Positions 2,082 to 62,025 of a DNA stretch of 64,000 nucleotides are shown here, in pieces; the stretch's first letter is position 1, and each line of letters opens with the position of its first letter. The stretch covers positions 163,584 to 227,583 of IMG/VR virus record IMGVR_UViG_3300042359_000853. One strand, written 5' to 3'. Made by a program: the position numbers and the translations under genes. The notes under the pieces are model-generated. The model was not told the DNA's origin. It made no database searches and saw nothing but the letters and a program-made list of their open reading frames with translations.

Positions 2082-2888
2082 ATGATACTTGTTACTGGAT
2101 ACAAAGGATTTATTGGTAAAAACCTATTTGATAAACTCATACAACTCAACTACTCCATCACAGGTTTAGATAGTGAATATTTTCTAGAAGAAGATTGGCA
2201 AGGTTGGCTAAAAAAGTACTTGAATGATAAATCACCAAGTTTCGTATTTCATGTAGGTGCGTGCTCCGATACACTAGAGACTGATGTAAATTATATGCTT
2301 ACTAGAAACTATGAATCTACTAGAATCATTTCTTCTTGGTGCGAAAGAAACGGTGTGGGTTTGGTTTATTCTTCCTCGGCTGCTAACTATGGATCGACTG
2401 GTCATCTTCCTACAAATCTTTATGGATGGAGTAAAAAAATAGCTGAAGATTTTGTATTATTAAAAGGTGGGGTTGCTCTTCGATATTTCAATGCCTTCGG
2501 ACCTGGTGAAGAAGGTAAAGGTAAAATGGCTTCTGTAGCCTATCAATCATGGATTAGAAATAAAGTGGGTGAGAAGATTAAACTCTTTCCAGGCCGTCCA
2601 ACTCGAGATTTTATCTATATAAGAGATATTGTAGAGGCGAATATATCTGCTATGAAAAACTACAGATCTATTTTTGGTAATTACTATGATATAGGAACTG
2701 GAGTTTCATCACCATTTGAAGATGTTTTAGAAAATTTAGATATACCTTTCACCTATACCGATAGTCTAGAAATACCAAAAGGATATCAATTTTTCACACA
2801 AGCTAATTCATCGAAATTTCTAAGAGGTTGGGAACCCAGATGGACTCTCTCAACTGCTCTAGCCGATTATAGAAAATATTTAGATTAA
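2082..2888 (+). CDS. hldD: ADP-L-glycero-D-manno-heptose 6-epimerase-like NAD-dependent epimerase
   Basis: TGYKGFIG Rossmann motif, FHVGACSDT, YSSSAANYG, YGWSK (YxxxK), LRYFN.FGPGE..KG.MAS, RDFIYI. Confidence 0.8.
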   Translation: MILVTGYKGFIGKNLFDKLIQLNYSITGLDSEYFLEEDWQGWLKKYLNDKSPSFVFHVGACSDTLETDVNYMLTRNYESTRIISSWCERNGVGLVYSSSAANYGSTGHLPTNLYGWSKKIAEDFVLLKGGVALRYFNAFGPGEEGKGKMASVAYQSWIRNKVGEKIKLFPGRPTRDFIYIRDIVEANISAMKNYRSIFGNYYDIGTGVSSPFEDVLENLDIPFTYTDSLEIPKGYQFFTQANSSKFLRGWEPRWTLSTALADYRKYLD

Positions 2889-3826
2889 GCAAATATCTTA
2901 TTCGCGTAGTTTCTGGTTTCTCTGCTCAATTGGTCCTGTATTTCTACAAAAGGAATTCCATCTTCTAGAGCTTTTTTATAAATATCTAGATTAGGACCAC
3001 TGTTGTATCCAGCAACAGCTAGGTCAAGTCTTTTCGGAAACCTATTTAGATGATCATTCATCATTTTTATATAGATTCTTAAAGATTCTTCTGAATTAGT
3101 TCTTAGACCACGACCACCATAGGAGTTCCAAGTTCCTATCAAAAACTGACACAGACCCACAGCTCCTGCACTAGATCTTGCCCTAGGATTAAAGTTAGAT
3201 TCAGTGTAGATTTGTCTTAGCGCTATAATATAGGGAAGACCTATTGAATTACAATCCCCCTCGAATTTTTTTGCTACTTCTTGGCCTACCACTTCTACGA
3301 ATTTATTCTTCAAGCTCTCATCATCAGGTAAAGGATCTCTAGAAGGGGCTTTAGCACCATCAAAAGTGGGAATACCCCCTTTCAGTGGAAGATCAAACTG
3401 TCTATTTAATACTGGTGATTCAGACTCCTTGCGAACAGGTCCTTCTGGTGGCATTTCAGTTGAGGGTTTTTTTGTAGTAGTAGAAGTTGTTGTTGCTTCT
3501 TTGGTTGTAGTTGTTGGTGTAGTATCTTGTTCTTTTGGTGTTCCGGCTGGTGTTTTCCAGGCCTGAGCTCTAGTTATCACTTTTTTTGGTGAGCCATCTT
3601 CTCTTTCATCTGGAAATTCAGTATCTAATATGTCGATTGATCTTTGATAAGAGTCTTTGAAATCTTTTCCAGTTATTTGATACCATTTCGTTGAACCCTT
3701 TCGTCTTGAGAGCCAATGTCCACCTTCTACCTTGTACTCAAAAGGATCGCCAGATCGTGTTTTAATTTCACCTACAGATTCGGTCAGATAGCTATAAAAT
3801 TGTTCCCAATTATGAAGTCTTCTCAT
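2885..3826 (-). CDS. Lytic transglycosylase (C-terminal SLT domain) with Thr-rich linker; putative virion protein
   Basis: IYTESNFNPRARSSAGAVGLCQF, AVAGYNSG and ETRNY SLT motifs; TTPTTTTKEATTTSTTT linker. Confidence 0.85.
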   Translation of the reverse strand: MRRLHNWEQFYSYLTESVGEIKTRSGDPFEYKVEGGHWLSRRKGSTKWYQITGKDFKDSYQRSIDILDTEFPDEREDGSPKKVITRAQAWKTPAGTPKEQDTTPTTTTKEATTTSTTTKKPSTEMPPEGPVRKESESPVLNRQFDLPLKGGIPTFDGAKAPSRDPLPDDESLKNKFVEVVGQEVAKKFEGDCNSIGLPYIIALRQIYTESNFNPRARSSAGAVGLCQFLIGTWNSYGGRGLRTNSEESLRIYIKMMNDHLNRFPKRLDLAVAGYNSGPNLDIYKKALEDGIPFVEIQDQLSRETRNYANKIFA

Positions 3827-3840
3827 AGATTTGTTTTTTT

Positions 3841-4407
3841 TTATCTAGAATAGTTAGGTGTTCTAGGCCCCTTTTTGCCCTCTTTTTCAACCTTTCTTTT
3901 ACGAGCAACAGATGCCTTTTTTTGTTTTTTTGTCATTTTAGCTGCTACTCTTACCTTACGACATTTTGGATATCCACCCCTCGACGCATCATCTCTACCA
4001 CATGGTGGATGTGATCCATCTGGATTTGTTTTAGAAATATCAACCCACTTTTCTTTAAACCACTTATCTAGACCACCGTGAGTATCTGAATAAGACCGTT
4101 TTTTTTCAAAGAACTGAGAATAGGATAGAATGTTATCTATAGATTCCTGTGTATTTTCTATTTGTTCTAGTTTATCGTAGTATTTCGGATCTTCCATCAG
4201 ATGATCAGTAGCTATTTCTCTAGCAATACTCTGGTCATCGGTGTGCTCCATTTCAACAGAAATACCCCTTTCTAGTTGCTTGTCGATCGTCTGATCTTCA
4301 ATAGGAAGATTGTGTTTCTTCTTGATATCTGCTAGAGTTTTACCATCGGATAGACCACCTGGTATTTTATCTTCTAAAAAAGATTGATATTTTAGAACGT
4401 CTTTCAT
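3841..4407 (-). CDS. Two-domain hypothetical protein (GIxVEMEHT...DHLxEDPKYY domain plus GLDKWFKEKWVD basic domain)
   Basis: Both motifs recur in large-phage hypothetical proteins; ORF is tightly packed with its neighbours. Confidence 0.7.
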   Translation of the reverse strand: MKDVLKYQSFLEDKIPGGLSDGKTLADIKKKHNLPIEDQTIDKQLERGISVEMEHTDDQSIAREIATDHLMEDPKYYDKLEQIENTQESIDNILSYSQFFEKKRSYSDTHGGLDKWFKEKWVDISKTNPDGSHPPCGRDDASRGGYPKCRKVRVAAKMTKKQKKASVARKRKVEKEGKKGPRTPNYSR

Positions 4408-5195
4408 TTTTTGGATCTTGATTTTTTCTTACCCTTTTTCCAGCGACCACCCTTTTCTTTGTATCTTTTAGCTGCTGCTCCTACAGCATAGGCTGAAGGC
4501 CAAACTTCGTATCTTGATTTGGCCCAACTCTTACAAGAAGCCCAAAGAGATGGATTGAGAGGTATGTTTTTCTCTAATAAAAAACTATATCCAACACTTT
4601 CATTATGTTGTATGTAAAGTTTCAGCTCATCTTGAATAAACCCAACCGCCTCTTCTATTCCAGAAAAGTATAACTCTTCAAATTCATCGTCTAAGTCTTC
4701 GAGATTAGTAGAGAATAGTTTATGTATTCTCACTAGACCTTCTTCACGATTTTCATCTATGTTGATAACCCACTCATAATAATAATCAAGATCGAGTTCA
4801 TCGCTAGTATATCTAACTTTCACAACAATATCATCATCTTGCATTTCCCAATCGAATTTAGATTCAAGCCCTGAAAAAAGTTCAGAAAATTCAATCATTT
4901 TTTCTTTTAGATAATTAATATCTTGAGATATATCTTCATTTATTTGATAAAATTGAGAAAATTTGTAAACAATACCCTCTTCTATCTGTGATTGAACTTG
5001 GGTATCTAAAATTTCATATTCATCTATATCGGGAAGAAGAGCTAATTTACTACCAGAATCCCAATCTACAAAAATACTTCCCATATCATCAATATAACTT
5101 ATTTTTCCCTCATCACCACTTCTAAGTTTAGTATAGGGATCTTCCAGTCGTATAATTCTTACTCTTTTTCCTATTAAATTGTCTTTTTCTTTCAT
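4404..5195 (-). CDS. Modular hypothetical protein (DUF4314-like N-terminus; basic VWPSAYA C-terminal domain)
   Basis: RVRIIRLEDPY..L..GDEG.I..IDDMGSIFVDWDSGSKLAL resembles DUF4314; C-terminus NPSLWASCK..AK.RYEVWPSAYA. Confidence 0.65.
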   Translation of the reverse strand: MKEKDNLIGKRVRIIRLEDPYTKLRSGDEGKISYIDDMGSIFVDWDSGSKLALLPDIDEYEILDTQVQSQIEEGIVYKFSQFYQINEDISQDINYLKEKMIEFSELFSGLESKFDWEMQDDDIVVKVRYTSDELDLDYYYEWVINIDENREEGLVRIHKLFSTNLEDLDDEFEELYFSGIEEAVGFIQDELKLYIQHNESVGYSFLLEKNIPLNPSLWASCKSWAKSRYEVWPSAYAVGAAAKRYKEKGGRWKKGKKKSRSKK

Positions 5196-5248
5196 ATCTG
5201 TATGTATATATATATTTTTTGAAAAATAGTAATTTTATATATAAACAA

Positions 5249-5935
5249 ATGATTACTACAAAAGATTTAGAAACAACATTCAAGGAAATATTCGAAACTG
5301 AAAAGGGGTTAGTTCAATCCATAGAAACTGTATTCGAATTATCAAGGGATAAAAGTTTTTACAAACTCGTAATTTCTATACATGGACTTTCTATCGAAGA
5401 TACACTTATTATTCATACTAAATTTATCTTCAAAACAAATTTAGAAAAAAACAAATTAATCGAAAACTCGTTTATCTATCTCTACGATATAAATTGTGAA
5501 TATCACAAAGTAGATTTTAGAAATATTATTGATCTTAGAAAAAAGATAGAAGATATTATTGAATCAAATGAGTTCGGAACAGATCTTCAAATACTCTCTG
5601 ATTTTATCGAGGCACCATCGATGTTCTTGAACTATTATCTTAAAAGAGCTAGAATAACAAACTACTCAATTTATGATGTTAAATATGATCCGAAATTTAA
5701 GACACTACCTTGTAGTCAAATAACATTTGATTTCAAGATAAATGTTAATAACGCTTATGATATTTCAGTTTCTATTCAGAAAAAAGAAAAAGAAGAGGTT
5801 GATGATATAGTGAGGTATAAATTCAGATTTCAATTTTTAGATAAAATCTTTAATAGAGAAACCGACACACTAACAAACATTCACTTTTTTATTGGATCAA
5901 ATATAGCAAAAACGCTCGATAAAATGATTAAATAA
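5249..5935 (+). CDS. Hypothetical protein
   Basis: Long ORF; start moved from 5219 to the in-frame ATG at 5249, just downstream of a TATATAAA element. Confidence 0.65.
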   Translation: MITTKDLETTFKEIFETEKGLVQSIETVFELSRDKSFYKLVISIHGLSIEDTLIIHTKFIFKTNLEKNKLIENSFIYLYDINCEYHKVDFRNIIDLRKKIEDIIESNEFGTDLQILSDFIEAPSMFLNYYLKRARITNYSIYDVKYDPKFKTLPCSQITFDFKINVNNAYDISVSIQKKEKEEVDDIVRYKFRFQFLDKIFNRETDTLTNIHFFIGSNIAKTLDKMIK

Positions 5936-5967
5936 TTTATATATACATAAAAATAAAAACTTCTACT

Positions 5968-6699
5968 ATGTTCAAACCAAATACCAATAACTATAGAACA
6001 AAATATTCTAAAATATCTCAATTTCATGATTTTACTGATAACATCTCATCTGAAAAAGATGATTTAGAAAGTGTAAAAAGAAGTTATGATCAAGATCATG
6101 ATTCAGATTATGAGCTACCTAATCTCTTCAAGTATAAATACAACCGTGTAACTCGAAAGATAGATGATAAAACGAAAGCTGAAGTTTTAGATGAGTTAGA
6201 AGAGATGCCAAATCCAAAAAAAGAAAAAGAATATACATTAGAACTTGAAAATTTAACTTCATTTGAGGATTTCGCAGATACACCGTCAAATGAAGTGAAT
6301 GAAGGACCAACTTCCTATATGTTTTTCAATAATCTTAAACTTATTCATAAACTTGTTAACGAAATGCTTACTTACGACCAAGAAGTAGTAAACTCTATTT
6401 TAGATCACGGTCACAACTGGGCCGAAGATCATATGTCAGTAGCAAAAGAAGCTATTTCTCATGTAAGAAACTATTTTGTTGGTGAAGTTGATGCTATCTC
6501 CGAATCTTACGAAGGTAACTATATGTTTTTCGGAAATCTAGTTTGTATTTCTGATATGATTGAAGAGATTATGGATAGAGATCCAAATAAAATTGACGTA
6601 GAGCTTAAAGAAAAACACGACTGGGCTGAAGATCATGTCTCAGCCGCTAAAGAAAATGTTACACAAGTTTATGATTTTCTAAAAAATGAAATTAAATAA
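5968..6699 (+). CDS. Hypothetical protein with two tandem (S/N)YMFF..NL...HxWAEDHxSxAKE domains
   Basis: Internal duplication is visible: SYMFFNNL...GHNWAEDHMSVAKE and NYMFFGNL...KHDWAEDHVSAAKE. Confidence 0.75.
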   Translation: MFKPNTNNYRTKYSKISQFHDFTDNISSEKDDLESVKRSYDQDHDSDYELPNLFKYKYNRVTRKIDDKTKAEVLDELEEMPNPKKEKEYTLELENLTSFEDFADTPSNEVNEGPTSYMFFNNLKLIHKLVNEMLTYDQEVVNSILDHGHNWAEDHMSVAKEAISHVRNYFVGEVDAISESYEGNYMFFGNLVCISDMIEEIMDRDPNKIDVELKEKHDWAEDHVSAAKENVTQVYDFLKNEIK

Positions 6700-6702
6700 G
6701 AT

Positions 6703-8124
6703 ATGATTGATAAATATTCCCAGTTTTTAGCACAAAAACTCTTATTAGAATCTGAAATCAAATATTCTGATGGTTTTAGAAAGATATTATCTGATATTGG
6801 TGACCCAGTAAGTAAAACACTATCTTCTCTGGAAAATCAAGATATTAAAACGAATGTTAATTTTATTGATATTCTCAAAGATGATAAAGAGCAATTATCG
6901 TTTATTCAAGATAAAAAAGCTTCAACTCTTTTAAGTAAACTCAAAAATGAAATAGATGTAACTTGGAATGGACAGGGTGGAATACTCAAGAACAACGCGG
7001 ATAATGAAGATGTTTTTTCAGCTCTTGGATATGTTAGACCTGAATCCGGTAATCTTCCAAGACCAGCTTCTACACAAACCAGAGGAAAATTATTGAGAGA
7101 TACGATTTCACCTAAAAGTGGTAAAATCTATGTTCTTGTAAAGTTTGGTGATATGGAAACAGTTCTCAATAAAGAGTTCTTAAATTTTGTTGATAGATCC
7201 GATGAGATCTGGACCCAATCAGTTAGACAACCCATGCGTGTAGGAAGAGCAGTGACTGCTCTATTACAAAATGCACCTGTGAAACACACTTCGGTTGAAA
7301 TTGCTGATTTTGTAAATAGATATAAAACAAAAGTTGATGAACTAAATGACGTATTTAGATTTATAGAAGTTGTAAGTGGTGATGATATAGCTAAGTGGTA
7401 TCATGTAGAAAACTATGAAGAAAAATCGGGTGGTTCAGAACTTCACCGATCATGTATGGCAAGAAAATCAGCAGGTGTCTTTGAAATCTATACCAAGAAT
7501 CCAGAAGTTTGTCAGTTAATTATTCAAAAAAGTGAGAGTGATCCCGACAAAATATCCGCTAGAGCTCTTCTGTGGACTTTGAATAGTGGAAAAAAGTTTA
7601 TGGATAGAGTTTATTTTAATGATCCTCAGTCTATTGAGTTATTTAGAAGTTATTGTAAAGAAAATAATATATGGGCTAAATATAATAATAATAGCGGAGC
7701 TTTTTCATCTGCTATTAATCCCGAAAATGGATCTAGAGAAGAGATCGAAATAGAAGTGGTTCTTGAATCGAGGAAGTACCGTCAGTTTCCCTATATGGAT
7801 ACACTGAAGTTTTTTCATCCGAAAAAAGCAATTCTAGACAACTCACATGAGGATGATCCGAACTGGTATAAATTAGAAGACACCGCTGGTGATTATATAA
7901 GTCAAGAAGATCAGGGGTGTGATAGGTGCTACGGTGAAGATTATGTTGATTGTTGGGAATGTGATGGAACGGCTTATTCTAGTTGTGATAATTGTGACGG
8001 AGACGGTAAAGTTGAAGATGAAGATGGAACAAAAGTTGAATGTGATGTATGCAATGGTAGTGGCAGAATCAATTGTGATACTTGTGATGGGGATGGAAGA
8101 CTTACTTGTCCTGAATGTGGTTAA
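6703..8124 (+). CDS. Hypothetical protein with C-terminal DnaJ-like CxxCxGxG zinc-finger repeats
   Basis: Six CxxC units in the last ~70 aa; SCM, ARALLW, FMDRVY and FPYMDT motifs upstream. Confidence 0.75.
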   Translation: MIDKYSQFLAQKLLLESEIKYSDGFRKILSDIGDPVSKTLSSLENQDIKTNVNFIDILKDDKEQLSFIQDKKASTLLSKLKNEIDVTWNGQGGILKNNADNEDVFSALGYVRPESGNLPRPASTQTRGKLLRDTISPKSGKIYVLVKFGDMETVLNKEFLNFVDRSDEIWTQSVRQPMRVGRAVTALLQNAPVKHTSVEIADFVNRYKTKVDELNDVFRFIEVVSGDDIAKWYHVENYEEKSGGSELHRSCMARKSAGVFEIYTKNPEVCQLIIQKSESDPDKISARALLWTLNSGKKFMDRVYFNDPQSIELFRSYCKENNIWAKYNNNSGAFSSAINPENGSREEIEIEVVLESRKYRQFPYMDTLKFFHPKKAILDNSHEDDPNWYKLEDTAGDYISQEDQGCDRCYGEDYVDCWECDGTAYSSCDNCDGDGKVEDEDGTKVECDVCNGSGRINCDTCDGDGRLTCPECG

Positions 8125-8126
8125 GA

Positions 8127-12047: not shown

Positions 12048-12377
12048 TTATAAAAGTCTATTTAGTTGAGATAAACCCTGATAAATATCAATAACTCGTA
12101 GTTTTAGAACAGATTGAGTTGATGGTGATGTCATCGATTGACCTTCTCTACGAATAAAGGCAGTTATATAAACAACATCCCCTCTTTTTACTTCTTTGTT
12201 AGCTAAATCTGTATTTACTGCTATTAAGTTTTCATTGGCACCAGAAGTAGATTCTTTTTCAGGTTCTACGAAAATATCAACAATAGATTCTATTTCGATT
12301 TTACCAGAAATCTCGTCAGAATCGAGATTTAATTTTTTATCTTCTACGTCAGAAGAGAGATTTGTAAATTTCTTCAT
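12048..12377 (-). CDS. Hypothetical protein
   Basis: ORF divergent from 12423 across an ATATATATA element. Confidence 0.65.
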   Translation of the reverse strand: MKKFTNLSSDVEDKKLNLDSDEISGKIEIESIVDIFVEPEKESTSGANENLIAVNTDLANKEVKRGDVVYITAFIRREGQSMTSPSTQSVLKLRVIDIYQGLSQLNRLL

Positions 12378-12422
12378 TAAACAATCGGTTTTTAATATAT
12401 ATATAAAATTTAAAGGAATAAA

Positions 12423-13739: not shown

Positions 13740-13861
13740 ACTTTTAATCTATAATATCATACCTATTAGGTATTATAAATAATTATATTTTTTATAGTAA
13801 AATATAGAAAAAAAGTTGAAAAAATACTACTTTACAGATTTATATTTTAATATATAGATCT

Positions 13862-24455: not shown

Positions 24456-26114
24456 TTAGTTCAAGTATCCATTGGCGTCAGTAACGACCATAGTCATATA
24501 CTGCTTTTGTGGATACCAACCTACTTCAGTTACAGCGTATCTAGATCTTAAAAGCATTCTTGGTGCGAATGTAGCTTCTGAGATAATACTGATGGATTGT
24601 GCCATCAAGTAAGGAACAAAGATGATACCTGGTTGATCAGGGTTGTTCTTTCTTCCGATTACGATTCTGTTGTCGTTATACTTCATATAAGGATCAACAT
24701 ATACGGTGATATCACCAATTTGACCTACTGGGTAAAGCTGACCAGAACCACTCAATTTTGATTTTAGAGGGTTGATAGTATAACCAGCGATGTCCATAAG
24801 CGATGCAGCTAGACCTCCGTTTGTTACAGCGAATTGAGCTGGACCAACACGACCTTCTGTGGCTATGAAGTTAGATGCATGAACCATTTTGGTGATAAGT
24901 TTTCTCTGATAGGCGTGTGTTGTTTCACCACCTGGTGCGGTAGCATAACTTGTATTATAGTCGAAGATAGAAGCACCACCCCTTGTAGGAGCAGAAGTTC
25001 TGTTGAGGTTACCCATTTCGAAAATCTTAAATACAATTTGCTTAGAGATAGTCTGTGAAAGTTCATTCACAAGGATACTTTCCATTTTTTGAGTGATATC
25101 CATACCAGTGTTGGCTTTGATATCCTCAATTTCAGTTCTTCTAAGAGCTGATGATACTTCAATTGTACCTACAGCAACCGACTTAGTAGAAACTTTTGGT
25201 CCGATTACACCTGCGTATGAGTTGTCATCGTCACCACGACCCATTGGGTAATCACCAGAAGCAGAAGCTCCTGTCCAGTTTGCTGAGAAACCAGGAATGT
25301 GATCTTCAAGTGCTGAAACAAGTTCAACAGTAACACCAGATGCAGTTACACCAGCGATGTTACGAATTTGAGCTGCGATAGTAGCAGTTGGGCCAAATGT
25401 GTTTTTTGCTTGATCATATACGTTTAGAGATGTGAATGCTGACAAATTAGCCGAACCAACAGCGTTTGTTTGTCTGTAGGCTCTGAACATTGGGTATCCA
25501 TCGATACGTGAGAAACCTAAGAATTCAACAAGACCTTCTTTATTGTCAGAAGCAGCAGGTATAGCTTGAGTCATAGCTGTAGAGTTGAATACATTATCAA
25601 AAATTCTACCACCGGATAGACCACCAGTTGTTTCTGTGATGGCTGGGCTAGCACCTGCTAAAGAAGCTGTGATACCTGCTTTGATGGCATCCAAGTTTGA
25701 GGCATTAACCTTGAAAACTTGTGGTCTGCCTTCATTTTCTTCATCTACATCATCGTATCTGAAATCGATGAATAGAAGTTCAATTCTTGGGCCAGGGGTT
25801 GGTTTTACAGCTACAAGGTCAAGACCGATTGTTTGAGCTGCGATTTTCATAGCAACTGGTAGTAGATTCTGAGCTACGTCACCCGAACCAGGAGTTGCGT
25901 TGATGGTTTGACCAGCGAAGCTGGCTGGGTTTGGAGCTAATACGCTACCCATACCTTGAATACCTGCGTTTACGTAGGCATTTTCATTGATTGAGTGATA
26001 TTCAGCATATTCTGACATCCAACCCAAACGTTCACTATCTGTGACACCCATGTTCTCTAGAACAGGAGACCACTTCTTAAGTGCTTTTTGTGAATCAATT
26101 CTTATGTGAGACAT
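24456..26114 (-). CDS. Major capsid protein (T4 gp23-like)
   Basis: KKWSPVLE, SINE maturation site, AAQTIGLDLVAVKP..GP, ELSQTISKQI, VYVDPY, G.IFVPYL, RYAV. Confidence 0.93.
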   Translation of the reverse strand: MSHIRIDSQKALKKWSPVLENMGVTDSERLGWMSEYAEYHSINENAYVNAGIQGMGSVLAPNPASFAGQTINATPGSGDVAQNLLPVAMKIAAQTIGLDLVAVKPTPGPRIELLFIDFRYDDVDEENEGRPQVFKVNASNLDAIKAGITASLAGASPAITETTGGLSGGRIFDNVFNSTAMTQAIPAASDNKEGLVEFLGFSRIDGYPMFRAYRQTNAVGSANLSAFTSLNVYDQAKNTFGPTATIAAQIRNIAGVTASGVTVELVSALEDHIPGFSANWTGASASGDYPMGRGDDDNSYAGVIGPKVSTKSVAVGTIEVSSALRRTEIEDIKANTGMDITQKMESILVNELSQTISKQIVFKIFEMGNLNRTSAPTRGGASIFDYNTSYATAPGGETTHAYQRKLITKMVHASNFIATEGRVGPAQFAVTNGGLAASLMDIAGYTINPLKSKLSGSGQLYPVGQIGDITVYVDPYMKYNDNRIVIGRKNNPDQPGIIFVPYLMAQSISIISEATFAPRMLLRSRYAVTEVGWYPQKQYMTMVVTDANGYLN

Positions 26115-26188: not shown

Positions 26189-28318
26189 TTAGATACTTTT
26201 GAATCTTTCTAGTATAGATCCGATTTCTTTTTCACTTAGTCTATCTTCTTGAATAAGAGCTTCGTGAGAAACTAACTTCTTAGAAGTTTGTTCTTTTTTG
26301 AATTGTCTTGTGTTCCAGAAGTGTTCAACTTTAAGTTCAGAATCAAGTTCTGGATAAAGTTTAGCTTGTGAAATAATCGATTTCTTACTTGATTCATCGA
26401 TCTTTGTCCAGATTGGCTTTATGTTATCAGGCATCAATCTGATTAGTCTTTCTTCTAAAGACTCGTTTTTGGCCGATAGAGCCTCGTTGATTAGTCTTAA
26501 AACCTCACCACCAGTAAAATAACTTCTTTCGTTTACATAAAGTTTTACTGTTTCCTGCTCTTCATTTGTAAGATTGTGGAAACTATCTACTTGTGTTTTG
26601 TTAAGGAATTTTAAGAAATTCAAATCATTATTCTCAGAAACTTTTCTTTTTTTAGCTTCTAAAATCAGTTTATCTATTTGTTTTGATAATTTAGATTCAT
26701 TGTAAACAGGGTTCTCTTCTTCTTCGAGTGGATCGGTTTCGATAGTATCTTCATCGTAACCACACTCCTCACAACCTTCTGTGTCCATATAGTATGCAGA
26801 AGTTGATTTTGGAAGATCTCCTTTCATTTTGCCATACATCGGAAGTTCTTCTTCTTCGTTTGGTTCGTCTGTTGGCATTTCATCCATAGCAACTACCTCT
26901 TCTTCTTCAAATCCGAAGTCTTCAAGTGTTGGAATAATTTTACCACCTTTTGATTCATTGATTCTTGAACCATTTAATTTTTCTGAAATAAGTCCAGCAT
27001 AAGAAATTGTCTTATCAACATTTTCAGCTAGATACTCAGAATAAGCGATGTTATCATCTAGATGCTCGGCGATGTATTCAGAGTAAGCGATGTTACCATC
27101 AAGGTTCTCAGCGATATACTCAGAATAAGCAATAGAGTTATCTAGATTTTCAGCTAGATATTCAGAGTAAGCGATGTTTGTATCAAGGTTCTCAGCAATA
27201 TACTCTGCGTATTTGATACTACTTTCTAGATTCTCAGCAATGTATTCTGAGTAGGAGATATTTCTATCCAAGTTCTCAGCTAGGTATTCTGAATAAGAAA
27301 TATTTCTATCCAAATTCTCGGCTAAATATTTAGAGTAAGAGATATTTCTATCTACGTTCTCAGCTAGATACTCAGAGTAAGAAATGTTCTTGTCTAGATT
27401 TTCGGCTAGATATTCCGAATAGTTGATTGCTTTTTCTAGATTTTCGGCTAGGTAATCGTTGTGAGAAATGATTTTCTCAGTTTTTGTTCTCAAGTCTTTG
27501 TTTTCATTAACAACAACTTGAATTTTCTCAGCTAGATAATCTAAATATTTAACTACTTGGCCGTTAGTCTTATTAAGTTCTTCATAATACTCAATAAGTT
27601 TTTCAACTTTCTTAGGTTCAACACTACCTTTGGTGATAGCTGTTTTTACCTGTTGCTTTGTTGAAGCGATTTCATTAATTAGATAATTAGAATAGTCCGT
27701 GAGTTGTCTTTTTGTAACAAATTCATTTTTGTTCATATTAAAAAGTTCATTTATTTTGGACTCGTTGGATACTTCGTATATCCTAAAGTTGCTTTTATTA
27801 TTAAATCCTAGGGATTCATTGATCGAAGACATACGAGCTGATGCAAATCCAGGATCTGCTACGATATCGTAAGTAAATAGTTTCTTGAGTGTTACTGATC
27901 CGTCGGATTCAGTAATACCAGCTGCTCTTGAGGAAACAAAGATTGGGCAACCATCATCAACAAGTGACTTAGCTTCTTTACCCCAATAAGTAGAAAGTAG
28001 TTTAATTCTACCATCAACTCTGTTTTCATTTTTGAGATATTTTGCCTCTAAAACAAGGTGTGAAGCTCTAGAAAGAGATGTATCAAAAACATCTGGGTGA
28101 TCAAATTCGCCATAGACGACACCCATGTTTTGAATTCTTTCTGTTAGTTCAGTTAAGGCCGGAACGAATTTATCGGCTGTGTATATCCTCTCATTTCTGT
28201 TCTTTTTATCGAACTCGGTGAAGATACCACCTAGAACATAACTGTTTTTTTGTGATGTTGCACTCTCATTGACCTCTAAAGGATTAGTGTTGTTTTCAAC
28301 AATTAATATTGGTTTCAT
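26189..28318 (-). CDS. Prohead core protease (gp21-like) fused to a scaffold-like repeat/coiled-coil region
   Basis: LGGIF...KNRNERIY, GEFDHP, SH, VSSRAAG, FTYDIVADPGF; 709 aa versus ~210 aa for T4 gp21. Confidence 0.88.
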   Translation of the reverse strand: MKPILIVENNTNPLEVNESATSQKNSYVLGGIFTEFDKKNRNERIYTADKFVPALTELTERIQNMGVVYGEFDHPDVFDTSLSRASHLVLEAKYLKNENRVDGRIKLLSTYWGKEAKSLVDDGCPIFVSSRAAGITESDGSVTLKKLFTYDIVADPGFASARMSSINESLGFNNKSNFRIYEVSNESKINELFNMNKNEFVTKRQLTDYSNYLINEIASTKQQVKTAITKGSVEPKKVEKLIEYYEELNKTNGQVVKYLDYLAEKIQVVVNENKDLRTKTEKIISHNDYLAENLEKAINYSEYLAENLDKNISYSEYLAENVDRNISYSKYLAENLDRNISYSEYLAENLDRNISYSEYIAENLESSIKYAEYIAENLDTNIAYSEYLAENLDNSIAYSEYIAENLDGNIAYSEYIAEHLDDNIAYSEYLAENVDKTISYAGLISEKLNGSRINESKGGKIIPTLEDFGFEEEEVVAMDEMPTDEPNEEEELPMYGKMKGDLPKSTSAYYMDTEGCEECGYDEDTIETDPLEEEENPVYNESKLSKQIDKLILEAKKRKVSENNDLNFLKFLNKTQVDSFHNLTNEEQETVKLYVNERSYFTGGEVLRLINEALSAKNESLEERLIRLMPDNIKPIWTKIDESSKKSIISQAKLYPELDSELKVEHFWNTRQFKKEQTSKKLVSHEALIQEDRLSEKEIGSILERFKSI
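26987..27448 (-). repeat. Eleven tandem 42-nt / 14-aa repeats (AENLDxNIxYSEYL)
   Basis: Counted in the translated protease ORF. Confidence 0.9.
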
Positions 28319-36505: not shown

Positions 36506-36543
36506 TTTAATATATATAAACAAAAAAATAAAAGTCCAAAAAA

Positions 36544-40696: not shown

Positions 40697-40715
40697 AGTT
40701 TTTTTTTGTTTTTTT

Positions 40716-43598: not shown

Positions 43599-46184
43599 TT
43601 ATATTTCAATTACATCCAATCTGCCAGTATTTGATGGATTTGAATCATCAGTAATCTCTAACATAAAACTCTTAAAACTTTTACCCGTGGATTCTACTTC
43701 TCTTTCATAGAAATTTTGGTAAGTTTCTAAATCTATTGTTGATAATCTTTGATTTGGTGCACTTAAGAATTTATTATTTTGATCATAAAGTGCTGATAGT
43801 TGAATATTAGCCTCTCCTTCTTTACCATCTCCTTCGGGATCTTTTCTTCCAGAATAAAGTTGTGGATTTATTTTAACTTTTTGATAATGAACAGATCTAA
43901 AAGGAGATTCATTTATATCACAATAGAATATCCAAATTATACCATTTTTTTCGTACAAATATCCATAGTATATGTTAGGGTCAAGTTGTGTAACATCACT
44001 CCAATCTGTGTATCCAGTATAACTCGATCTATTATCTTCATAAAATTTATTTGCAGATAATGGAGTCTTAAAAGTTATTTTGACAGGATAAAACTTTATC
44101 GACACACCACCTGATTTTGTTTCAACTTTATCTACTAATGATGTATCAAGAAAATTAACATAAATAGGAACATTACTTCCTGATTTATTTTGTAGAATAT
44201 TACCGTAAGAAGTATTTTGTATTTCTGATTCCTCTTGTTGTGATATAGGATCTTTAGTAGTTGGGATGCACCACATGAATCTTTGTGTTGTTAGCGATGG
44301 TTTTACGTTCCAATATAAAAAATTTTGATTTGTATCACTGTTTTTACTCTTGTCGGCGGAATATCTCAAATCGGGTAATTTTTCTTGAATTTCTTGTCCA
44401 AAATATTTACGAGTGGCTTCGTCTATTAAATCTTCACCTCTACATTTTGATGGGGTTGCTAAATCTTGAAGTAAGTTGAACAATACTGGTCCCATCTTGC
44501 CCTTCCCTTGAATTTTTGGTGTTGATGAGTCCTGATTTTCCAATAATAATTTCCATTTGTATGAATCATTGAATTTATCCTCTGCTCCTGGATAATCAAA
44601 GTTTATATTTGCAAATATCTTCCTTAATTTTTGGTCTTGAAGTAGTCGATTTACGAAAGTCTGAAACTTTCTATAGACGATCTTTTTTGCCCAAGGTCCG
44701 AAATCAGGAATTACAGCTTCTCCACCCGCATCTTTTAGTGTAGAACTAGCGTCTCTACCTTTAGATGGACCACCTCCCAATTTTTCATATTCTTGAAAAG
44801 TTTTCATCGAAACTCTACCACCTGGTCTACCCGAAGGTATATAATCTGTTGCAAATAATCTATATGCTACTGTTAATAAGTTAAATAGTCTTACCATAGC
44901 ATCCGAAGCTATTTGATAGTCGAGTGTGAATGTTCCAGCGGAAAGTTGATTCTCTAGTTCTTCTAGTTCTCTTTCATCATCTCTAGTAAGTCTGAAAGCT
45001 GTTAAATTTTTCTCATTTACCATAGAATATTCATAATGAAAATTCTCATTGATGCCTGCTTTTGGGAAATAACTTTTCCAAATATTAGCAATTGTTTCCG
45101 GTTTTAGTGTTGTTGTTGAGGTTGTTATTGTTGGCGTTGGAACTGGTGTTGTAGTAGTTGATGTTGTAATACTCTGTGTTGTAGTTGATGTATTTGTTTG
45201 CGTTACAGTTGAAGTATTTGTTTGAGTTACAGTTGAGGTATTTGTTTGAGTTACAGTTGAGGTATTTGTTTGCGTTACAGCTGGTGTAGAAGTATTGGTT
45301 TGTGTAACAACTGGTGTTGTTTTTATATTTTTTTTATTATATGAAGTAGAACCAAAACCTATTTTTCCCCTACCGTAATCCGTATTTTTAATACCTATTT
45401 GAGATTTTGTTTTTATTTCTTCTAATAATAATCTATATTCTTCAAATTCAGAAAATTTACGGAAAATTCCTTTATTTAGTGATTCATTTTTTACAGAAAT
45501 TTCTTTTCTCAATACTTCGTCTGAATCAGACACAACAGTTCTCTCTTTCCACTGTTGTTTTCTAGCATTATCGCCTCCTAGATCTCTAGTTGGATTACAT
45601 TTTTTCCATCTAAATCTTCTAAGTTCGATAGCGAAATCCGAGTGAATATCTCTCAAATCATTCAATTCTTCTCTTTTGAAAAGTTTTTTTAGTTCTTCTA
45701 AAGTTTCTAATTCTAGTAATAAATCACCAATTAGTGAGCCTGGTGGTAGGTCTTTCCATTTATCTGTTATATCTTTATTGGAAATAAATTTAGCATCTGA
45801 TGAATCGATGCCAATTAATAATTTTAGCTTTGTGTCATCTGTGCCCGTGCCATCACAATCTACGTCTTCTTTCCAATCAGGTAGAGCATCATTTGTTGTT
45901 AAGCAAACATCTTTTATTTTAGCAACGTGATTTTTTATTCTTAGTCGATACAACTTTACTCTCAAATCTTTATTCATACTTTCTCTGAGAATCTCATAGA
46001 TAGTATTTTCTATTTCTTGTAAAACCCCATCCATCCTCATAGAATCATATTGAAGTTTTAATTTTCTCAAAGTTGAGTTTATTAGCCTTCCAAATAAAGA
46101 ACCACCCCAAGTTACTTCATTTTTGAATACTTCATTCATTTTATCTTTTTGTAAAAAAGTATCTCTTTTAAGAATATATCTCAT
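43599..46184 (-). CDS. Large hypothetical protein with Thr-rich repeat linker; putative head protein
   Basis: 861-aa ORF; repeated xNE/LLE sites and a KFSEF motif. Confidence 0.75.
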   Translation of the reverse strand: MRYILKRDTFLQKDKMNEVFKNEVTWGGSLFGRLINSTLRKLKLQYDSMRMDGVLQEIENTIYEILRESMNKDLRVKLYRLRIKNHVAKIKDVCLTTNDALPDWKEDVDCDGTGTDDTKLKLLIGIDSSDAKFISNKDITDKWKDLPPGSLIGDLLLELETLEELKKLFKREELNDLRDIHSDFAIELRRFRWKKCNPTRDLGGDNARKQQWKERTVVSDSDEVLRKEISVKNESLNKGIFRKFSEFEEYRLLLEEIKTKSQIGIKNTDYGRGKIGFGSTSYNKKNIKTTPVVTQTNTSTPAVTQTNTSTVTQTNTSTVTQTNTSTVTQTNTSTTTQSITTSTTTTPVPTPTITTSTTTLKPETIANIWKSYFPKAGINENFHYEYSMVNEKNLTAFRLTRDDERELEELENQLSAGTFTLDYQIASDAMVRLFNLLTVAYRLFATDYIPSGRPGGRVSMKTFQEYEKLGGGPSKGRDASSTLKDAGGEAVIPDFGPWAKKIVYRKFQTFVNRLLQDQKLRKIFANINFDYPGAEDKFNDSYKWKLLLENQDSSTPKIQGKGKMGPVLFNLLQDLATPSKCRGEDLIDEATRKYFGQEIQEKLPDLRYSADKSKNSDTNQNFLYWNVKPSLTTQRFMWCIPTTKDPISQQEESEIQNTSYGNILQNKSGSNVPIYVNFLDTSLVDKVETKSGGVSIKFYPVKITFKTPLSANKFYEDNRSSYTGYTDWSDVTQLDPNIYYGYLYEKNGIIWIFYCDINESPFRSVHYQKVKINPQLYSGRKDPEGDGKEGEANIQLSALYDQNNKFLSAPNQRLSTIDLETYQNFYEREVESTGKSFKSFMLEITDDSNPSNTGRLDVIEI
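45190..45315 (-). repeat. About five 24-nt coding repeats (VTQTNTST)
   Basis: gtatttgtttg(a/c)gttacagttga(a/g) tandem units. Confidence 0.85.
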
Positions 46185-61443: not shown

Positions 61444-62025
61444 TTACCAGAACCCCGGATATGACTTACCCCAAAGAGAGGAGAATCTGTTAGCACGACA
61501 TGCCCAGTAACCAGGTGTCATTTTATCCTTTTTTTCACGACAATTATGTCTTTTCGAAAATCTAGCTCTTGCTTTCGGATCACTAACTTTAGCATTTAGA
61601 CCACCTTTTACATCACCAAAATGAACTACTTTCACATTTCCAGTCTTGGGGTTTTTAACATAAACTTTATACTTTTTAGGTCCTGAACTTCTCATAGGTT
61701 TTCCAAGACTTACTTTTTTTCCTTTATATTCAGCTTCTGTAATAAACTCATCACAAAGTATCGGAAAATCAAGTGGCACCATTTCCCCTTCGAACTTTGC
61801 CCAAAGACCTAGATCACTCTCTTCAAAAAGAACTCGATCAGCATCACTCAATAATTCTTGATGATTTCTTGATTCTCTTATCAACTCGAAAAATGAAGTA
61901 GATCCAGGTCTAAATATATTTTCCAAAACTGATATCTTATTTTCTAAGTGATAAACTAGATTATTACTTGGCTTCTTATCGATGAAGTCCTCGAATTTTA
62001 ATATATTCTCGTAAATATTTTCCAT
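61444..62025 (-). CDS. Two-domain hypothetical protein (basic KKYKVYV...HFGD...HNC...GYWAC C-terminal domain)
   Basis: Motif recurs in large-phage hypothetical proteins; KFEDF N-terminal motif and an ITE^AEYKG junction. Confidence 0.7.
   Translation of the reverse strand: MENIYENILKFEDFIDKKPSNNLVYHLENKISVLENIFRPGSTSFFELIRESRNHQELLSDADRVLFEESDLGLWAKFEGEMVPLDFPILCDEFITEAEYKGKKVSLGKPMRSSGPKKYKVYVKNPKTGNVKVVHFGDVKGGLNAKVSDPKARARFSKRHNCREKKDKMTPGYWACRANRFSSLWGKSYPGFW

What the first reader, a model, noticed from the sequence alone, without database searches (positions are those of the whole stretch)
3841..6699. Candidate polyproteins: domains joined by internal targeting motifs and protease-like xxE sites
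3841 ORF: motif - domain 1 - QESIDNILSYSQFFEK - domain 2. 4404 ORF: DUF4314-like - IEEGIVYKFSQFYQINED - acidic domain - HNESVGYSFLLEK - basic domain. 5968 ORF: two tandem domains, each starting right after VNE or SES. The same logic appears in the 43599 ORF (KNES...FRKFSEFEEYRLLLEE) and the 61444 ORF (FITE^AEYKG). This suggests the prohead protease cuts multi-cargo precursors into small, often very basic modules that may compact DNA.
Basis: partly seen in the sequence, partly recalled or inferred. Interest (0 to 1): 0.68.

Follow-up and report, generated by a model that had tools for sequence, protein, structure and literature searches.

The report
Leader-tagged modular cargo proteins, T4-like jumbo phage
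Three late genes of a 228-kb freshwater T4-like phage are chains of small mobile protein modules, each keeping its own short leader peptide that looks like phage T4's capsid-targeting tag, so they may be multi-cargo precursors cut up inside the phage head, but no cutting or packaging has been shown.

Summary
ORFs 3841-4407(-), 4404-5195(-) and 5968-6699(+) are chains of independently folding modules. The modules are joined by low-confidence linkers that carry a recurrent peptide, phi-K-x-[FYW]-x-x-[FWLM]-phi-x-E.

That peptide is the N-terminal leader of about 20 of roughly 240 genes in this genome. Dozens of metagenomic homologues encode each module as a separate small gene that starts with the leader. 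Podophage homologues of the two DUF5872 halves lack it.

The leader has the pattern of the T4 capsid-targeting sequence MKTYQEFIAE (targeting residues Y4 and F7, processing residues I8 and E10). The head genes are T4-type. The protease-scaffold protein holds about 13 tandem repeats of NISYSEY[LI]AENLDR. Leader genes share a TATATATA promoter-like motif with the head and sheath genes. The best-conserved phi-x-E of each family lies in an inter-domain linker.

The 'polyprotein' reading is therefore plausible and sharper than before, but cleavage, encapsidation and DNA compaction remain untested. Bare 'xxE' has no statistical weight, and the ORF C modules are acidic, not basic.

Verdict: partly supported; a new variant of the T4 CTS / prohead-protease cargo theme.

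The parts
4366..4407 (-). ORF A N-terminal leader MKDVLKYQSFLEDK (aa 1-14)
   Evidence: It matches the genome-wide leader pattern.
4153..4329 (-). ORF A DUF5661 module (aa 27-85; net charge -8 for aa 15-86)
   Evidence: Pfam E=1.2e-14. A stand-alone homologue with its own leader is P0296. Charge.
4102..4149 (-). ORF A junction QESIDNILSYSQFFEK (aa 87-102): an internal copy of the leader
   Evidence: It aligns with the N-terminus (MDNILSFEQFFEKK, MEHIKLFEEF..) of many separate domain-2 genes, 103-117 aa long. It ranks 5th among all internal PSSM hits.
3844..4101 (-). ORF A domain 2 (aa 103-188): C-terminal half of DUF5872, net charge +17
   Evidence: Pfam partial match, profile positions 33-114 of 116; phrog_23735. 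Leaderless podophage homologues. Charge.
5010..5171 (-). ORF B DUF4314 module (aa 9-62), SH3/Tudor-like barrel
   Evidence: Pfam E=1.2e-17. AlphaFold2 strands and Foldseek hits to SH3/Tudor/PetP folds.
4932..4985 (-). ORF B junction 1 IEEGIVYKFSQFYQINED (aa 71-88): internal leader followed by I-N-E
   Evidence: pLDDT below 50. F79 is conserved in at least 90% of 23 homologues. In the 8 homologues that lack DUF4314 this motif is the N-terminus.
4608..4931 (-). ORF B acidic alpha/beta domain (aa 89-196, net charge -21)
   Evidence: No Pfam or PDB relative.
4569..4607 (-). ORF B junction 2 HNESVGYSFLLEK (aa 197-209) with candidate sites HNE|S and LLE|KN
   Evidence: pLDDT below 50 at 201-208. E208, K209 and N210 are invariant in 23 of 23 sequences. 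E208 is the most conserved phi-x-E column of the family.
4407..4568 (-). ORF B basic helical domain (aa 210-263): N-terminal half of DUF5872 plus a Lys tail, net charge +14
   Evidence: Pfam partial match, profile positions 1-48 of 116. Also.
5205..5216 (-). TATATATA promoter-like motif heading the unit ORF B - ORF A - SLT protein
   Evidence: The same motif precedes the MCP, protease-scaffold, portal and sheath genes.
2885..3826 (-). Third gene of the unit: leader (MRRLHNWEQFYSYLTE|S), small domain, T/P-rich linker, SLT lytic transglycosylase
   Evidence: Pfam SLT E=3.9e-13; PHROG matches to 'internal virion protein with endolysin domain'.
6004..6033 (+). ORF C N-terminal motif YSKISQFHDF (aa 13-22)
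   Evidence: Conserved as S-x-I-x-x-F-x-D-F in 29 homologues.
6244..6303 (+). ORF C internal motif LENLTSFEDF, acidic linker and VNE (aa 93-112)
   Evidence: The I-K-S-F-E-x-F column is conserved across the family, and the linker after it is hypervariable. pLDDT below 50 at 99-113.
6304..6495 (+). ORF C repeat domain 1 (SYMFFxNL...GHNWAEDH)
6496..6516 (+). ORF C inter-repeat linker ISESYEG, with I-S-E|S
   Evidence: phi-x-E at this column in 22 of 29 homologues, the highest in the family. pLDDT below 50 at 180-184.
6517..6696 (+). ORF C repeat domain 2 (NYMFFGNL...HDWAEDH)
26189..28318 (-). Prohead protease (aa ~1-200) fused to a scaffold. Five phi-N-E-[SNA] sites at aa 16, 166, 270, 453 and 610
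   Evidence: phrog_207 E=2.6e-29; Pfam S77 weak; BLASTP against T4 gp21 E=6e-4. Five sites against 0.2 expected.
26963..27547 (-). About 13 tandem 14-residue scaffold repeats NISYSEY[LI]AENLDR (aa ~258-452), each carrying the pattern of the T4 CTS core (YQEFIAE)
   Evidence: DNA period 42, 27000-27415. Conserved in the Mahaphage homologues.
24456..26114 (-). Gp23-type major capsid protein. Its N-terminal propeptide region carries LKKWSPVLEN and SINE|NAYVNAG
   Evidence: Pfam Gp23 E=2.1e-27. Sequence, site.
43599..46184 (-). 861-aa ORF with an N-terminal leader-like MRYILKRDTFLQKD and an internal ..VKNES LNKGIFRKFSEFEEYRLLLEE.., followed by a T-rich linker
   Evidence: The internal hit ranks 11th in the PSSM scan.
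61444..62025 (-). 193-aa ORF: leader MENIYENILKFEDF, acidic half (-12), FITE|AEYKG, basic module (+20; phrog_7595 from aa 96)

Best explanation
The three ORFs are late-expressed composite proteins. They were built by in-frame fusion and shuffling of small mobile modules: DUF5661, DUF4314, the two halves of DUF5872, an acidic alpha/beta domain, and a 'YMFF...HxWAEDH' helical repeat.

In this Mahaphage-related, T4-type lineage each module travels with its own amphipathic leader of about 15 residues, phi-K-x-[FYW]-x-x-[FWLM]-phi-x-E. A fusion therefore leaves a leader in the linker.

The most likely role of the leader is that of the T4 capsid-targeting sequence. It would dock the precursor onto the scaffold core of the prohead, whose own repeat unit YSEY[LI]AE has the same pattern. 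The gp21-like protease would then cut after Glu at phi-x-E (often phi-N-E|S or phi-phi-E|K) in the disordered linkers. That would release separate acidic and strongly basic modules, which stay in the head and probably enter the host with the DNA.

Shown here: the modular anatomy, leaders at the junctions, separate leader-bearing genes for each module in relatives, conservation of junction motifs and junction Glu, a T4-type head module, the scaffold repeats, and a shared promoter-like motif.

Inferred only: docking to the scaffold, cleavage, retention in the capsid, ejection, and what the modules do.
For: 1. Module boundaries.
- Pfam envelopes and AlphaFold2 place both ORF B junctions and both ORF C junctions in segments with pLDDT below 50, between confident domains.

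2. Modules as separate genes.
- In the syntenic relative L006, ORF A domain 2 is a separate gene starting MDNILSFEQFFEKK, directly after the ORF B homologue.
- Many protein clusters of stand-alone domain 2 start MEH[IL]KLFE[ED]F..[IL][IL]EEEKK.
- 8 of 23 ORF B relatives lack DUF4314 and start MKYLKLFENF / MIKKWNEFIREF, aligned to the internal VYKFSQFY.
- P0044 keeps an internal Met (NMKHLKLFENF).
- The Mahaphage LR756502 has the modules in permuted order.

3. The leader is a lineage-specific add-on.
- Podophage homologues of both DUF5872 halves lack it. The C-half homologues begin at the SY/GGL..KW block that follows the leader in ORF A.
- Leader DNA is not conserved, only the peptide is.

4. 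T4 likeness.
- Gp23 MCP, Gp20 portal and a gp21-like protease are present.
- The T4 CTS is MKTYQEFIAE. Residues 4 and 7 target, residues 8 and 10 direct processing, and gp21 cuts L/I-x-E (PMC9026906).
- That T4-derived pattern is 8-fold enriched at N-termini here (6 against 0.76). It occurs 11 times in the scaffold repeats, with a further match just upstream.
- The repeats are conserved at 47-66% identity in Mahaphages.

5. Candidate protease sites.
- phi-N-E-[SNA] occurs 5 times in the protease-scaffold protein (0.2 expected) and once at the MCP propeptide boundary.
- The top conserved phi-x-E column of each family lies in a linker: E208 in 23/23, E179 in 22/29.

6. Timing.
- TATATATA lies upstream of MCP, protease, portal, sheath, ORF B and ORF C.
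- Leader genes carry it in 13/20 cases against 64/220 for the others, p=0.0017.

7. Company.
- 10 of 10 tested leader proteins have no Pfam or PHROG family.
- The one leader protein with a recognised enzymatic domain is an SLT transglycosylase in the same unit.
- DUF5661 is fused inside the DUF2213 protein just upstream of the DUF2184 gene in Vibrio phage VPs20. Reading DUF2213 as protease/scaffold-like and DUF2184 as the capsid protein rests on my own knowledge, not on the record's annotation.

8. Independent parallel.
- A T4-like cyanophage protein of 666 aa by its annotation (the first 662 were read) next to terS strings several small modules together. Among them are DUF5661, DUF6321 and stretches resembling the two DUF5872 halves.
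- By my reading, 6 of its 10 [ILV]-x-E sites lie just before a module. PHROG family ends and starts fall at three of them and near a fourth.
Against: - There are no proteomic or biochemical data. Every functional step is by analogy.
- Spacing differs from T4. The leader often has F-L-E or F-F-E rather than F-I-A-E, and P1' is often E, K or D.
- About 8-10% of all genes carrying a capsid tag is far more than in T4.
- The leader PSSM scores the scaffold repeats only modestly (8.4 bits).
- Internal leader-like hits are only about 2-fold above shuffles.
- phi-x-E is short and is also conserved inside helices, for example E102 and E182 in ORF B.
- Conservation of an internal leader is equally expected if it is a structural linker helix.
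- ORF B's own N-terminus lacks a leader.
- All ORF C modules are acidic.
- The modules also occur in podophages, so their function does not depend on a T4-type head.
- The TATATATA motif also precedes a topoisomerase-like gene, and its timing is not measured.
Confidence: 0.45

Rival explanations
1. Ordinary uncleaved multi-domain proteins. The leader is a generic amphipathic N-terminal helix of small proteins in this phage lineage, with a role unrelated to the capsid (oligomerisation, folding, partner binding). Its internal copies are simply what gene fusion leaves behind, retained as linker helices.
For: - Fusion and fission and domain permutation are directly documented.
- In some fusions the internal leader has decayed: P0219 has SIDFNEKK and P0214 has LIEEFNEGKK.
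- phi-x-E is expected by chance in E-rich amphipathic segments.
- The modules function without leaders in podophages.
Against: - This does not explain why the leader pattern coincides with the experimentally defined T4 CTS and with the scaffold repeat.
- It does not explain why the best-conserved phi-x-E in each family sits in a disordered linker.
- It does not explain why leader genes share the promoter-like motif of the head genes.
- It does not explain why internal leaders stay conserved at 35-45% overall identity next to hypervariable linkers.
Confidence: 0.35
2. The leader is an address or handling tag for something other than the capsid. Candidates are recognition by the phage's own DnaK/DnaJ chaperones, a degradation or regulatory tag, or targeting to another assembly such as the baseplate or tail. 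Junction copies would let each module be handled separately.
For: - The genome encodes DnaK and two J-domain proteins, judged from their N-terminal sequences.
- Leader proteins are of unknown function.
- The 43599 and 43042 ORFs lie downstream of the tail-sheath and lysis genes, among signal-peptide proteins, rather than next to the head genes.
Against: - No known chaperone or degron motif matches.
- The pattern match to the T4 CTS and to the scaffold repeat is specific.
- The MCP propeptide region itself carries leader-like LKKWSPVLEN and WMSEYAEY.
Confidence: 0.15
3. The signal lies at nucleic-acid level or is an artefact: an AU-rich 5' coding bias for translation initiation, a recombination sequence for cassette exchange, or mis-assembled or frameshifted ORFs.
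For: - The genome is AT-rich (32% GC) and encodes bS21.
- Lys-tail and Glu/Lys-rich overlaps occur at gene borders.
Against: - Leaders share at most 11 identical bases and differ at synonymous sites. F/Y/W and I/L/V interchange, which indicates selection on the peptide.
- Internal copies are conserved as protein.
- The ORFs are identical and indel-free in independent metagenomes, and 95-97% identical copies exist elsewhere.
Confidence: 0.03

Closest known systems
Phage T4 internal proteins IPI/IPII/IPIII (and Alt) with the capsid-targeting sequence MKTYQEFIAE, processed by prohead protease gp21 at L/I-x-E
   Same: - T4-type head genes.
- A short N-terminal tag with aromatic residues three apart, followed by aliphatic-x-Glu.
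- The tag sits on fast-evolving proteins of unknown function, several of them very basic.
- Shared promoter-like motif with head genes.
- The scaffold is rich in [LI]-A-E, as T4 gp22 is (LIAE, KIAE, WLAEN).
   Different: - The tag is on about 20 genes rather than 3-5.
- It also occurs inside proteins, at module junctions.
- Spacing to the Glu varies.
- Protease and scaffold are one 709-aa protein with a 14-residue tandem repeat.
- Nothing has been shown experimentally.
phiKZ / 201phi2-1 / SPN3US head, inner-body and ejection proteins cleaved by gp175/gp245 at S/A/G-x-E
   Same: - Jumbo phages that load many proteins into the head and remove propeptides after Glu with very few other determinants.
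- Several cleavage sites per substrate (PMC9026906).
   Different: - These phages belong to a different lineage, and their protease is only distantly related to T4 gp21.
- Their P3 preference is small residues, not hydrophobic ones.
- No recurrent leader motif and no multi-cargo chains are mentioned in the review passages I read (PMC9026906).
Polyvalent proteins of phages and conjugative elements (Iyer et al. 2017, PMC5512222)
   Same: Several unrelated domains in one polypeptide, predicted to be packaged, delivered with the DNA and proteolytically separated.
   Different: - Those are large, enzyme-rich chains (MPTase, ART, methylase, helicase and others), often with their own peptidase.
- Here the modules are tiny, non-enzymatic DUFs punctuated by a leader.
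- DUF4314 is not mentioned in that paper.
Pfam DUF5872 (PF19197), DUF5661 (PF18905), DUF4314 (PF14192)
   Same: The modules of ORFs A and B belong to these families.
   Different: - DUF5872 is split here. Its N-half ends ORF B and its C-half ends ORF A, with a leader-DUF5661 module inserted between them.
- Full-length DUF5872 proteins themselves contain 'KNES + INNFEEFNEN' between the halves. The Pfam family is therefore itself a two-module chain.

Membership tests
T4-type CTS-addressed head cargo | The genome has T4-type prohead machinery: gp20 portal, gp23 MCP, gp21-type protease and a scaffold core. | tested here: met
   Portal_T4 E=4.8e-50; Gp23 E=2.1e-27; phrog_207 E=2.6e-29. The Pfam S77 match is weak (0.0034). 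BLASTP against T4 gp21 gives E=6e-4 over the His region.
T4-type CTS-addressed head cargo | An N-terminal tag of about 10 aa with aromatic residues at i and i+3 (T4 residues 4 and 7), an aliphatic residue at i+4 and Glu at i+6. | tested here: inconclusive
   - The genome-wide leader consensus has this pattern, and the pattern is 8-fold enriched at N-termini.
- In the ORFs of the finding the Glu is one residue nearer (FLE, FFE) or further away (YQINE).
- ORF B has no N-terminal leader.
T4-type CTS-addressed head cargo | Cleaved after Glu by the prohead protease. | not testable with these tools
   Only site conservation could be examined: E208 in 23/23 and E179 in 22/29, both in predicted linkers.
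T4-type CTS-addressed head cargo | Present inside mature capsids. | not testable with these tools
   No proteome is available. Complex prediction of scaffold plus ORF A gave no verdict.
T4-type CTS-addressed head cargo | Expressed together with head genes. | tested here: inconclusive
   The promoter-like TATATATA motif is shared with MCP, protease, portal and sheath. Pieces are present in two metatranscriptome libraries, but timing is unknown.
Pfam DUF4314 | Score above the gathering cutoff. | tested here: met
   ORF B aa 9-62, 64 bits against 27.
Pfam DUF5661 | Score above the gathering cutoff. | tested here: met
   ORF A aa 27-85, 54.8 bits against 27.
Pfam DUF5872 | Score above the gathering cutoff over the whole model. 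| tested here: not met
   Each ORF holds only half of the model. ORF B covers profile positions 1-48 (18.9 bits) and ORF A covers 33-114 (18.1 bits); the cutoff is 27.5. Together the two halves cover the model.
Polyvalent proteins (Iyer et al. 2017) | Two to 15 domains, including conflict-related enzymatic effector domains, often with an MPTase or other peptidase in the same chain. | tested here: not met
   No enzymatic or peptidase domain was found in ORFs A-C.

The most novel reading that the evidence does not exclude
Mahaphage-related T4-type jumbo and huge phages use a lineage-wide capsid address code.
- A portable leader that mimics the scaffold's own 14-residue repeat would load roughly a tenth of the proteome into the prohead.
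- Cargo evolves by shuffling leader-plus-domain cassettes into multi-cargo precursors.
- The prohead protease cuts these at the leaders. It would free acidic pro-domains from strongly basic modules that travel with the DNA into the host.
Probability: 0.3. Interest if true: 0.8.

Novelty: new variant of a known kind. Interest (0 to 1): 0.6.

Why it matters
Huge phages of freshwater Bacteroidota are uncultured, and most of their genes have no known function.

If the leader is a capsid address, it gives a sequence-only way to list the packaged and ejected cargo of this clade, which includes the largest known phage genomes. It would also explain how such cargo diversifies, by cassette fusion and fission.

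It yields exact, testable cleavage sites. It would extend the T4 CTS principle, which is already used for protein delivery in engineered T4, to a naturally multiplexed form.

Separately, it shows that Pfam DUF5872 is a two-module chain rather than a single domain.

Tried and rejected
- Complex prediction of the scaffold part (aa 205-709) with ORF A gave no verdict: score 0.00, controls not run. It counts neither for nor against binding.
- Foldseek against the PDB. ORF B gave only a generic SH3/Tudor-like match for DUF4314 and nothing useful for the acidic domain. ORF C gave no match at E<=0.001. A profile search of the ORF C family against PDB sequences gave nothing.
- An iterated PSSM drifted into false positives such as Rossmann and Rad50 N-termini. 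I replaced it with fixed regexes and a curated-seed PSSM.
- Genome-wide enrichment of 'NES' or phi-N-E-S: none. The signal is confined to the protease-scaffold protein and a few others.
- Short (145-175 aa) 'stand-alone' ORF C repeat proteins are mostly from short contigs (550-1984 bp). At least one (P0199) is identical to an internal stretch of a longer protein (P0137). They look like truncated gene calls, so I did not count them as separate genes.
- A DNA-level explanation for the leader (recombination site or translation signal) was rejected.
- Literature searches for the DUF names and for leader strings found no prior description.
- Reads: only contigs were available, so no transcript ends or expression levels could be read.


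Full report
CONTEXT

The window is the last 64 kb of a single 227,583-bp contig with about 32% GC. The head module is T4-type:
- Gp20-type portal at 19893-21599;
- Gp23-type major capsid protein at 24456-26114;
- a 709-aa protein at 26189-28318 whose first ~250 residues match head-maturation proteases (phrog_207, E=2.6e-29; Pfam Peptidase_S77 weakly; BLASTP against T4 gp21 E=6e-4 across the His region);
- a tail sheath at 30194-33913.

The nearest records are the huge uncultured 'Mahaphage'-type genomes LR756502, LR745206, LR756504 and LR756501, with protease-scaffold identity of 47-74%. The stretch of the finding is near-identical in at least 18 lake-water metagenomes. It shows no indels in two independent runs, and pieces of it occur in two metatranscriptome libraries.

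ORF A (3841-4407, minus strand, 188 aa) reads: leader MKDVLKYQSFLEDK, DUF5661 (aa 27-85), QESIDNILSYSQFFEK (aa 87-102), then the C-terminal half of DUF5872.

ORF B (4404-5195, minus strand, 263 aa) reads: DUF4314 (aa 9-62), IEEGIVYKFSQFYQINED (aa 71-88), an acidic domain, HNESVGYSFLLEK (aa 197-209), then the N-terminal half of DUF5872 with a Lys tail.

An AlphaFold2 model of ORF B built on 23 homologues (pLDDT 76) has three confident domains, 9-63, 89-200 and 209-258. Confidence drops below 50 exactly at 66-88 and 201-208, which are the two junctions.

ORF C (5968-6699, 243 aa) has a weakly predicted first 112 residues and two confident helical repeats, 117-171 and 186-242. pLDDT is below 50 at 99-113 and 180-184.

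The strings quoted for the 43599 and 61444 ORFs are also present.

THE JUNCTION MOTIF IS THE GENOME'S N-TERMINAL LEADER

About 20 of roughly 240 genes begin with phi-K-x-[FYW]-x-x-[FWLM]-phi-x-E. Examples are MKYLKTYESF, MKHLKKFNNLIKE, MIHKKFNQFLNEE, MKILQSFRSFLEK and MKLIKKFEEF.
- Fixed regexes give 15-18 N-terminal matches against about 4 in shuffles.
- Leaders share at most 11 identical bases and differ at synonymous sites, so selection acts on the peptide.
- Ten of ten leader proteins tested outside the window have no Pfam or PHROG family.
- The one leader protein with a recognised enzymatic domain is the SLT lytic transglycosylase at 2885-3826, the third gene of the ORF B - ORF A unit.

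In the syntenic contig L006 the ORF B homologue keeps both junction motifs (KLFSEFFLIEN; NYFLLEKN). It is followed, after a stop codon, by a separate gene that starts MDNILSFEQFFEKKKPYSNTHGGLDKWF. That gene is ORF A's domain 2, with ORF A's internal motif as its N-terminus. DUF5661 is absent there.

Many protein clusters of stand-alone domain 2 (103-117 aa) start MEH[IL]KLFE[ED]F..[IL][IL]EEEKK. A stand-alone leader-DUF5661 also exists, P0296.

Of 23 aligned ORF B relatives, 8 lack DUF4314 and begin MKYLKLFENF, MIKKWNEFIREF or MRYIKLFENF. These align with the internal VYKFSQFY, where F79 is conserved in at least 90%. E208, K209 and N210 of junction 2 are invariant in all 23, although they lie outside the Pfam model.

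One relative keeps an internal Met (NMKHLKLFENF), a visible fusion scar. In Mahaphage LR756502 the order is permuted: leader - acidic domain - X - DUF4314.

Full-length DUF5872 proteins themselves read: leader - LLEKN - N-half - KNES - INNFEEFNEN - C-half. The Pfam family is therefore already a two-module chain.

The ORF C family (130 clusters at E<=0.001) keeps three features: the N-terminal S-x-I-x-x-F-x-D-F, an internal I-K-S-F-E-x-F before a hypervariable acidic linker, and [ILV]-x-E between the two repeats.

Podophage homologues of the DUF5872 halves (Pelagibacter phage HTVC027P gp50; phage DSL-LC04) have no leader. The C-half homologues begin at the SY/GGL..KW block that follows the leader in ORF A.

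The leader is thus a portable, lineage-specific add-on that moves with each module.

WHY A T4-LIKE ADDRESS-AND-CUT SIGNAL IS THE BEST READING

The T4 capsid-targeting sequence is MKTYQEFIAE. Mutational work puts targeting at residues 4 (Y) and 7 (F) and processing at residues 8 (I) and 10 (E). gp21 cuts after L/I-x-E (PMC9026906).

The pattern taken from that literature, [YFW]xx[FYW][ILV]xE, gives these results here:
- It is found 6 times in the first 15 residues of this proteome against 0.76 +/- 0.95 in shuffles.
- Outside one protein it is not enriched internally.
- That one protein is the protease-scaffold. It contains about 13 tandem 14-residue repeats NISYSEY[LI]AENLDR at aa ~258-452, with a DNA period of 42.
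- The repeats are conserved in Mahaphage homologues at 47-66% identity.

T4 gp22 likewise carries LIAE, KIAE and WLAEN.

The protease-scaffold protein also has five phi-N-E-[SNA] sites, where 0.2 are expected, at the borders of its parts. The MCP has SINE|NAYVNAG where the gp23-type propeptide should end. A related jumbo-phage scaffold (Yersinia fHe-Yen9-03 g252) starts MSKLDKFLNESS and has five such sites.

Within the ORF B and ORF C families, the single most conserved phi-x-E column lies in a predicted disordered linker. These are E208 (23/23) and E179 (22/29). E199 (HNE|S column) has phi-x-E in 15/23 and E87 (INE|D) in 8/14.

A promoter-like [AT]ATATATA lies 4-40 nt upstream of 81 of 240 genes. 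Among them are MCP, protease-scaffold, portal, sheath, ORF B, ORF C and the ORF at 5249. Leader genes carry it in 13/20 cases against 64/220 for the others (p=0.0017). Most of the remaining leader genes lie directly downstream, on the same strand, of a gene that carries the motif.

Two outside observations fit the reading:
- DUF5661 is fused inside the DUF2213 protein just upstream of the DUF2184 gene in Vibrio phage VPs20. Reading DUF2213 as protease/scaffold-like and DUF2184 as the capsid protein rests on my own knowledge, not on the record's annotation.
- T4-like cyanophage DSL-LC02 encodes, next to terS, a protein of 666 aa by its annotation (the first 662 were read). It strings several small modules together, among them DUF5661, DUF6321 and stretches resembling the two DUF5872 halves. 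It has only ten [ILV]-x-E sites. By my reading six of them lie just before a module (VKE|G twice, VVE|G, VSE|A, VKE|N, IGE|D). PHROG family starts or ends fall at residues 108/109, 408, 434 and about 578.

WHAT IS NOT SHOWN

Nothing here demonstrates docking, cleavage, presence in the capsid or ejection.
- Bare 'xxE' is meaningless in a Glu-rich proteome. phi-N-E-S is not enriched genome-wide.
- Internal leader-like hits are only about 2-fold above shuffles.
- phi-x-E is also conserved inside helices.
- The leader PSSM scores the scaffold repeats only modestly.
- Spacing to the Glu differs from T4.
- ORF B lacks an N-terminal leader.
- The charge picture is mixed. ORF A runs -8 then +17, ORF B runs -21 then +14, and the 61444 ORF runs -12 then +20. 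This resembles acidic pro-pieces on basic cargo. All ORF C modules, however, are acidic.
- 'DNA compaction' is untested, and the same modules live in podophages.
- The complex prediction gave no verdict.
- Fold searches gave no function.

VERDICT

The anatomy is certain: chains of leader-plus-domain cassettes that occur as separate genes in relatives.

The mechanism is the best-supported explanation but rests on analogy. It is T4-type targeting to a scaffold that carries the same pattern, followed by cutting at phi-x-E in the linkers. I put it at about 0.45.

The main rival is uncleaved fusion proteins whose leader is a generic helix, at about 0.35. A different addressee for the leader gets about 0.15, and nucleic-acid or artefact explanations about 0.03.

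I found no prior description of the leader, of the scaffold repeat, or of leader-punctuated chains. I class it as a new variant of the T4 CTS / prohead-protease cargo theme.

Noticed in passing
window 26963-27547 (-), within ORF 26189-28318: The protease and the scaffold are one 709-aa protein. It holds about 13 tandem 14-residue repeats NISYSEY[LI]AENLDR (DNA period 42), conserved in Mahaphage genomes. Each repeat has the pattern of the T4 CTS core YQEFIAE.
   Followed up: yes
genome-wide; in the window e.g. 5205-5216 (-), 5236-5243 (+), 5937-5945 (+): A promoter-like [AT]ATATATA motif lies 4-40 nt upstream of 81 of 240 genes. These include MCP, protease-scaffold, portal and tail sheath. It is reminiscent of the T4 late promoter TATAAATA, which I cite from my own knowledge.
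   Followed up: partly
window 22847-24364 (-) and 28397-30103 (-): Two paralogous HNH homing-endonuclease genes (phrog_3339, E about 1e-117) are wedged between the portal/MCP genes and between the protease and sheath genes.
   Followed up: no
window 3841-5195 (-); L006 2155-3227: Pfam DUF5872 is split over two adjacent genes. Its N-half ends ORF B and its C-half ends ORF A, with a leader-DUF5661 cassette inserted between them. In L006 the halves are adjacent separate genes. In phage DSL-LC04 they are adjacent leaderless genes.
   Followed up: yes
L002 1414-3399 (Synechococcus phage DSL-LC02, OR032571): A protein of 666 aa by its annotation (662 read), next to terS, concatenates several small modules. 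Six of its ten [ILV]-x-E sites lie just before a module. Large PHROG families (727, 3477) suggest this architecture is common in cyanomyoviruses.
   Followed up: partly
L031 826-1680 (LR756502): The Mahaphage homologue of ORF B has a permuted module order: leader - acidic domain - extra module - DUF4314.
   Followed up: partly
window 6703-8124 (+): A 473-aa leader protein (MIDKYSQFLAQKLLLESE) ends in a run of CxxC...G cysteine repeats that resemble zinc-finger repeats. It is conserved next to ORF C in L006 and L007.
   Followed up: no
window 35336-42617 (-): A cluster of five genes whose products start with signal-peptide-like sequences (MKKVIFPLLLIF.., MKKFLVGLFALI.., MKNWLSILSLSF..). They sit beside a protein at 33972-34826 whose N-terminus looks like a peptidoglycan-binding domain (my reading; no family scan was run).
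   Followed up: no
genome C1:102235-102426, 12051-13928, 40563-41585, 102443-103168 (outside the window): Judged from N-terminal sequences only, the phage encodes ribosomal protein bS21, a DnaK and two J-domain proteins. This would fit the freshwater Bacteroidota bS21-phage group of PMC9723584.
   Followed up: no
genome C1:146283-146933 (-) (L026): A 216-aa protein has three phi-N-E-S sites (PINESS, IVNESI, PLNESL) spaced 20 residues apart, against 0.06 expected. It may be another protease substrate.
   Followed up: no
whole proteome; e.g. window 43599-46184 and 2885-3826: The tripeptide TPT is about 21-fold over-represented (249 against 11.7). T/P-rich linkers are common in this phage's proteins.
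   Followed up: no
L006 2447-2490; gene borders of many stand-alone domain-2 homologues: The reading frame stays open for about 10 codons upstream of the leader Met (MEKEKIKEKIM-EH..). The A/G-rich DNA also encodes the upstream gene's Lys tail in another frame. A slippery poly-A run at the border could allow frameshift fusion of the two DUF5872 halves.
   Followed up: no
window 2800-8200: The stretch is near-identical in at least 18 lake-water metagenomes and one drinking-water metagenome from many studies. This is a widespread freshwater phage.
   Followed up: partly
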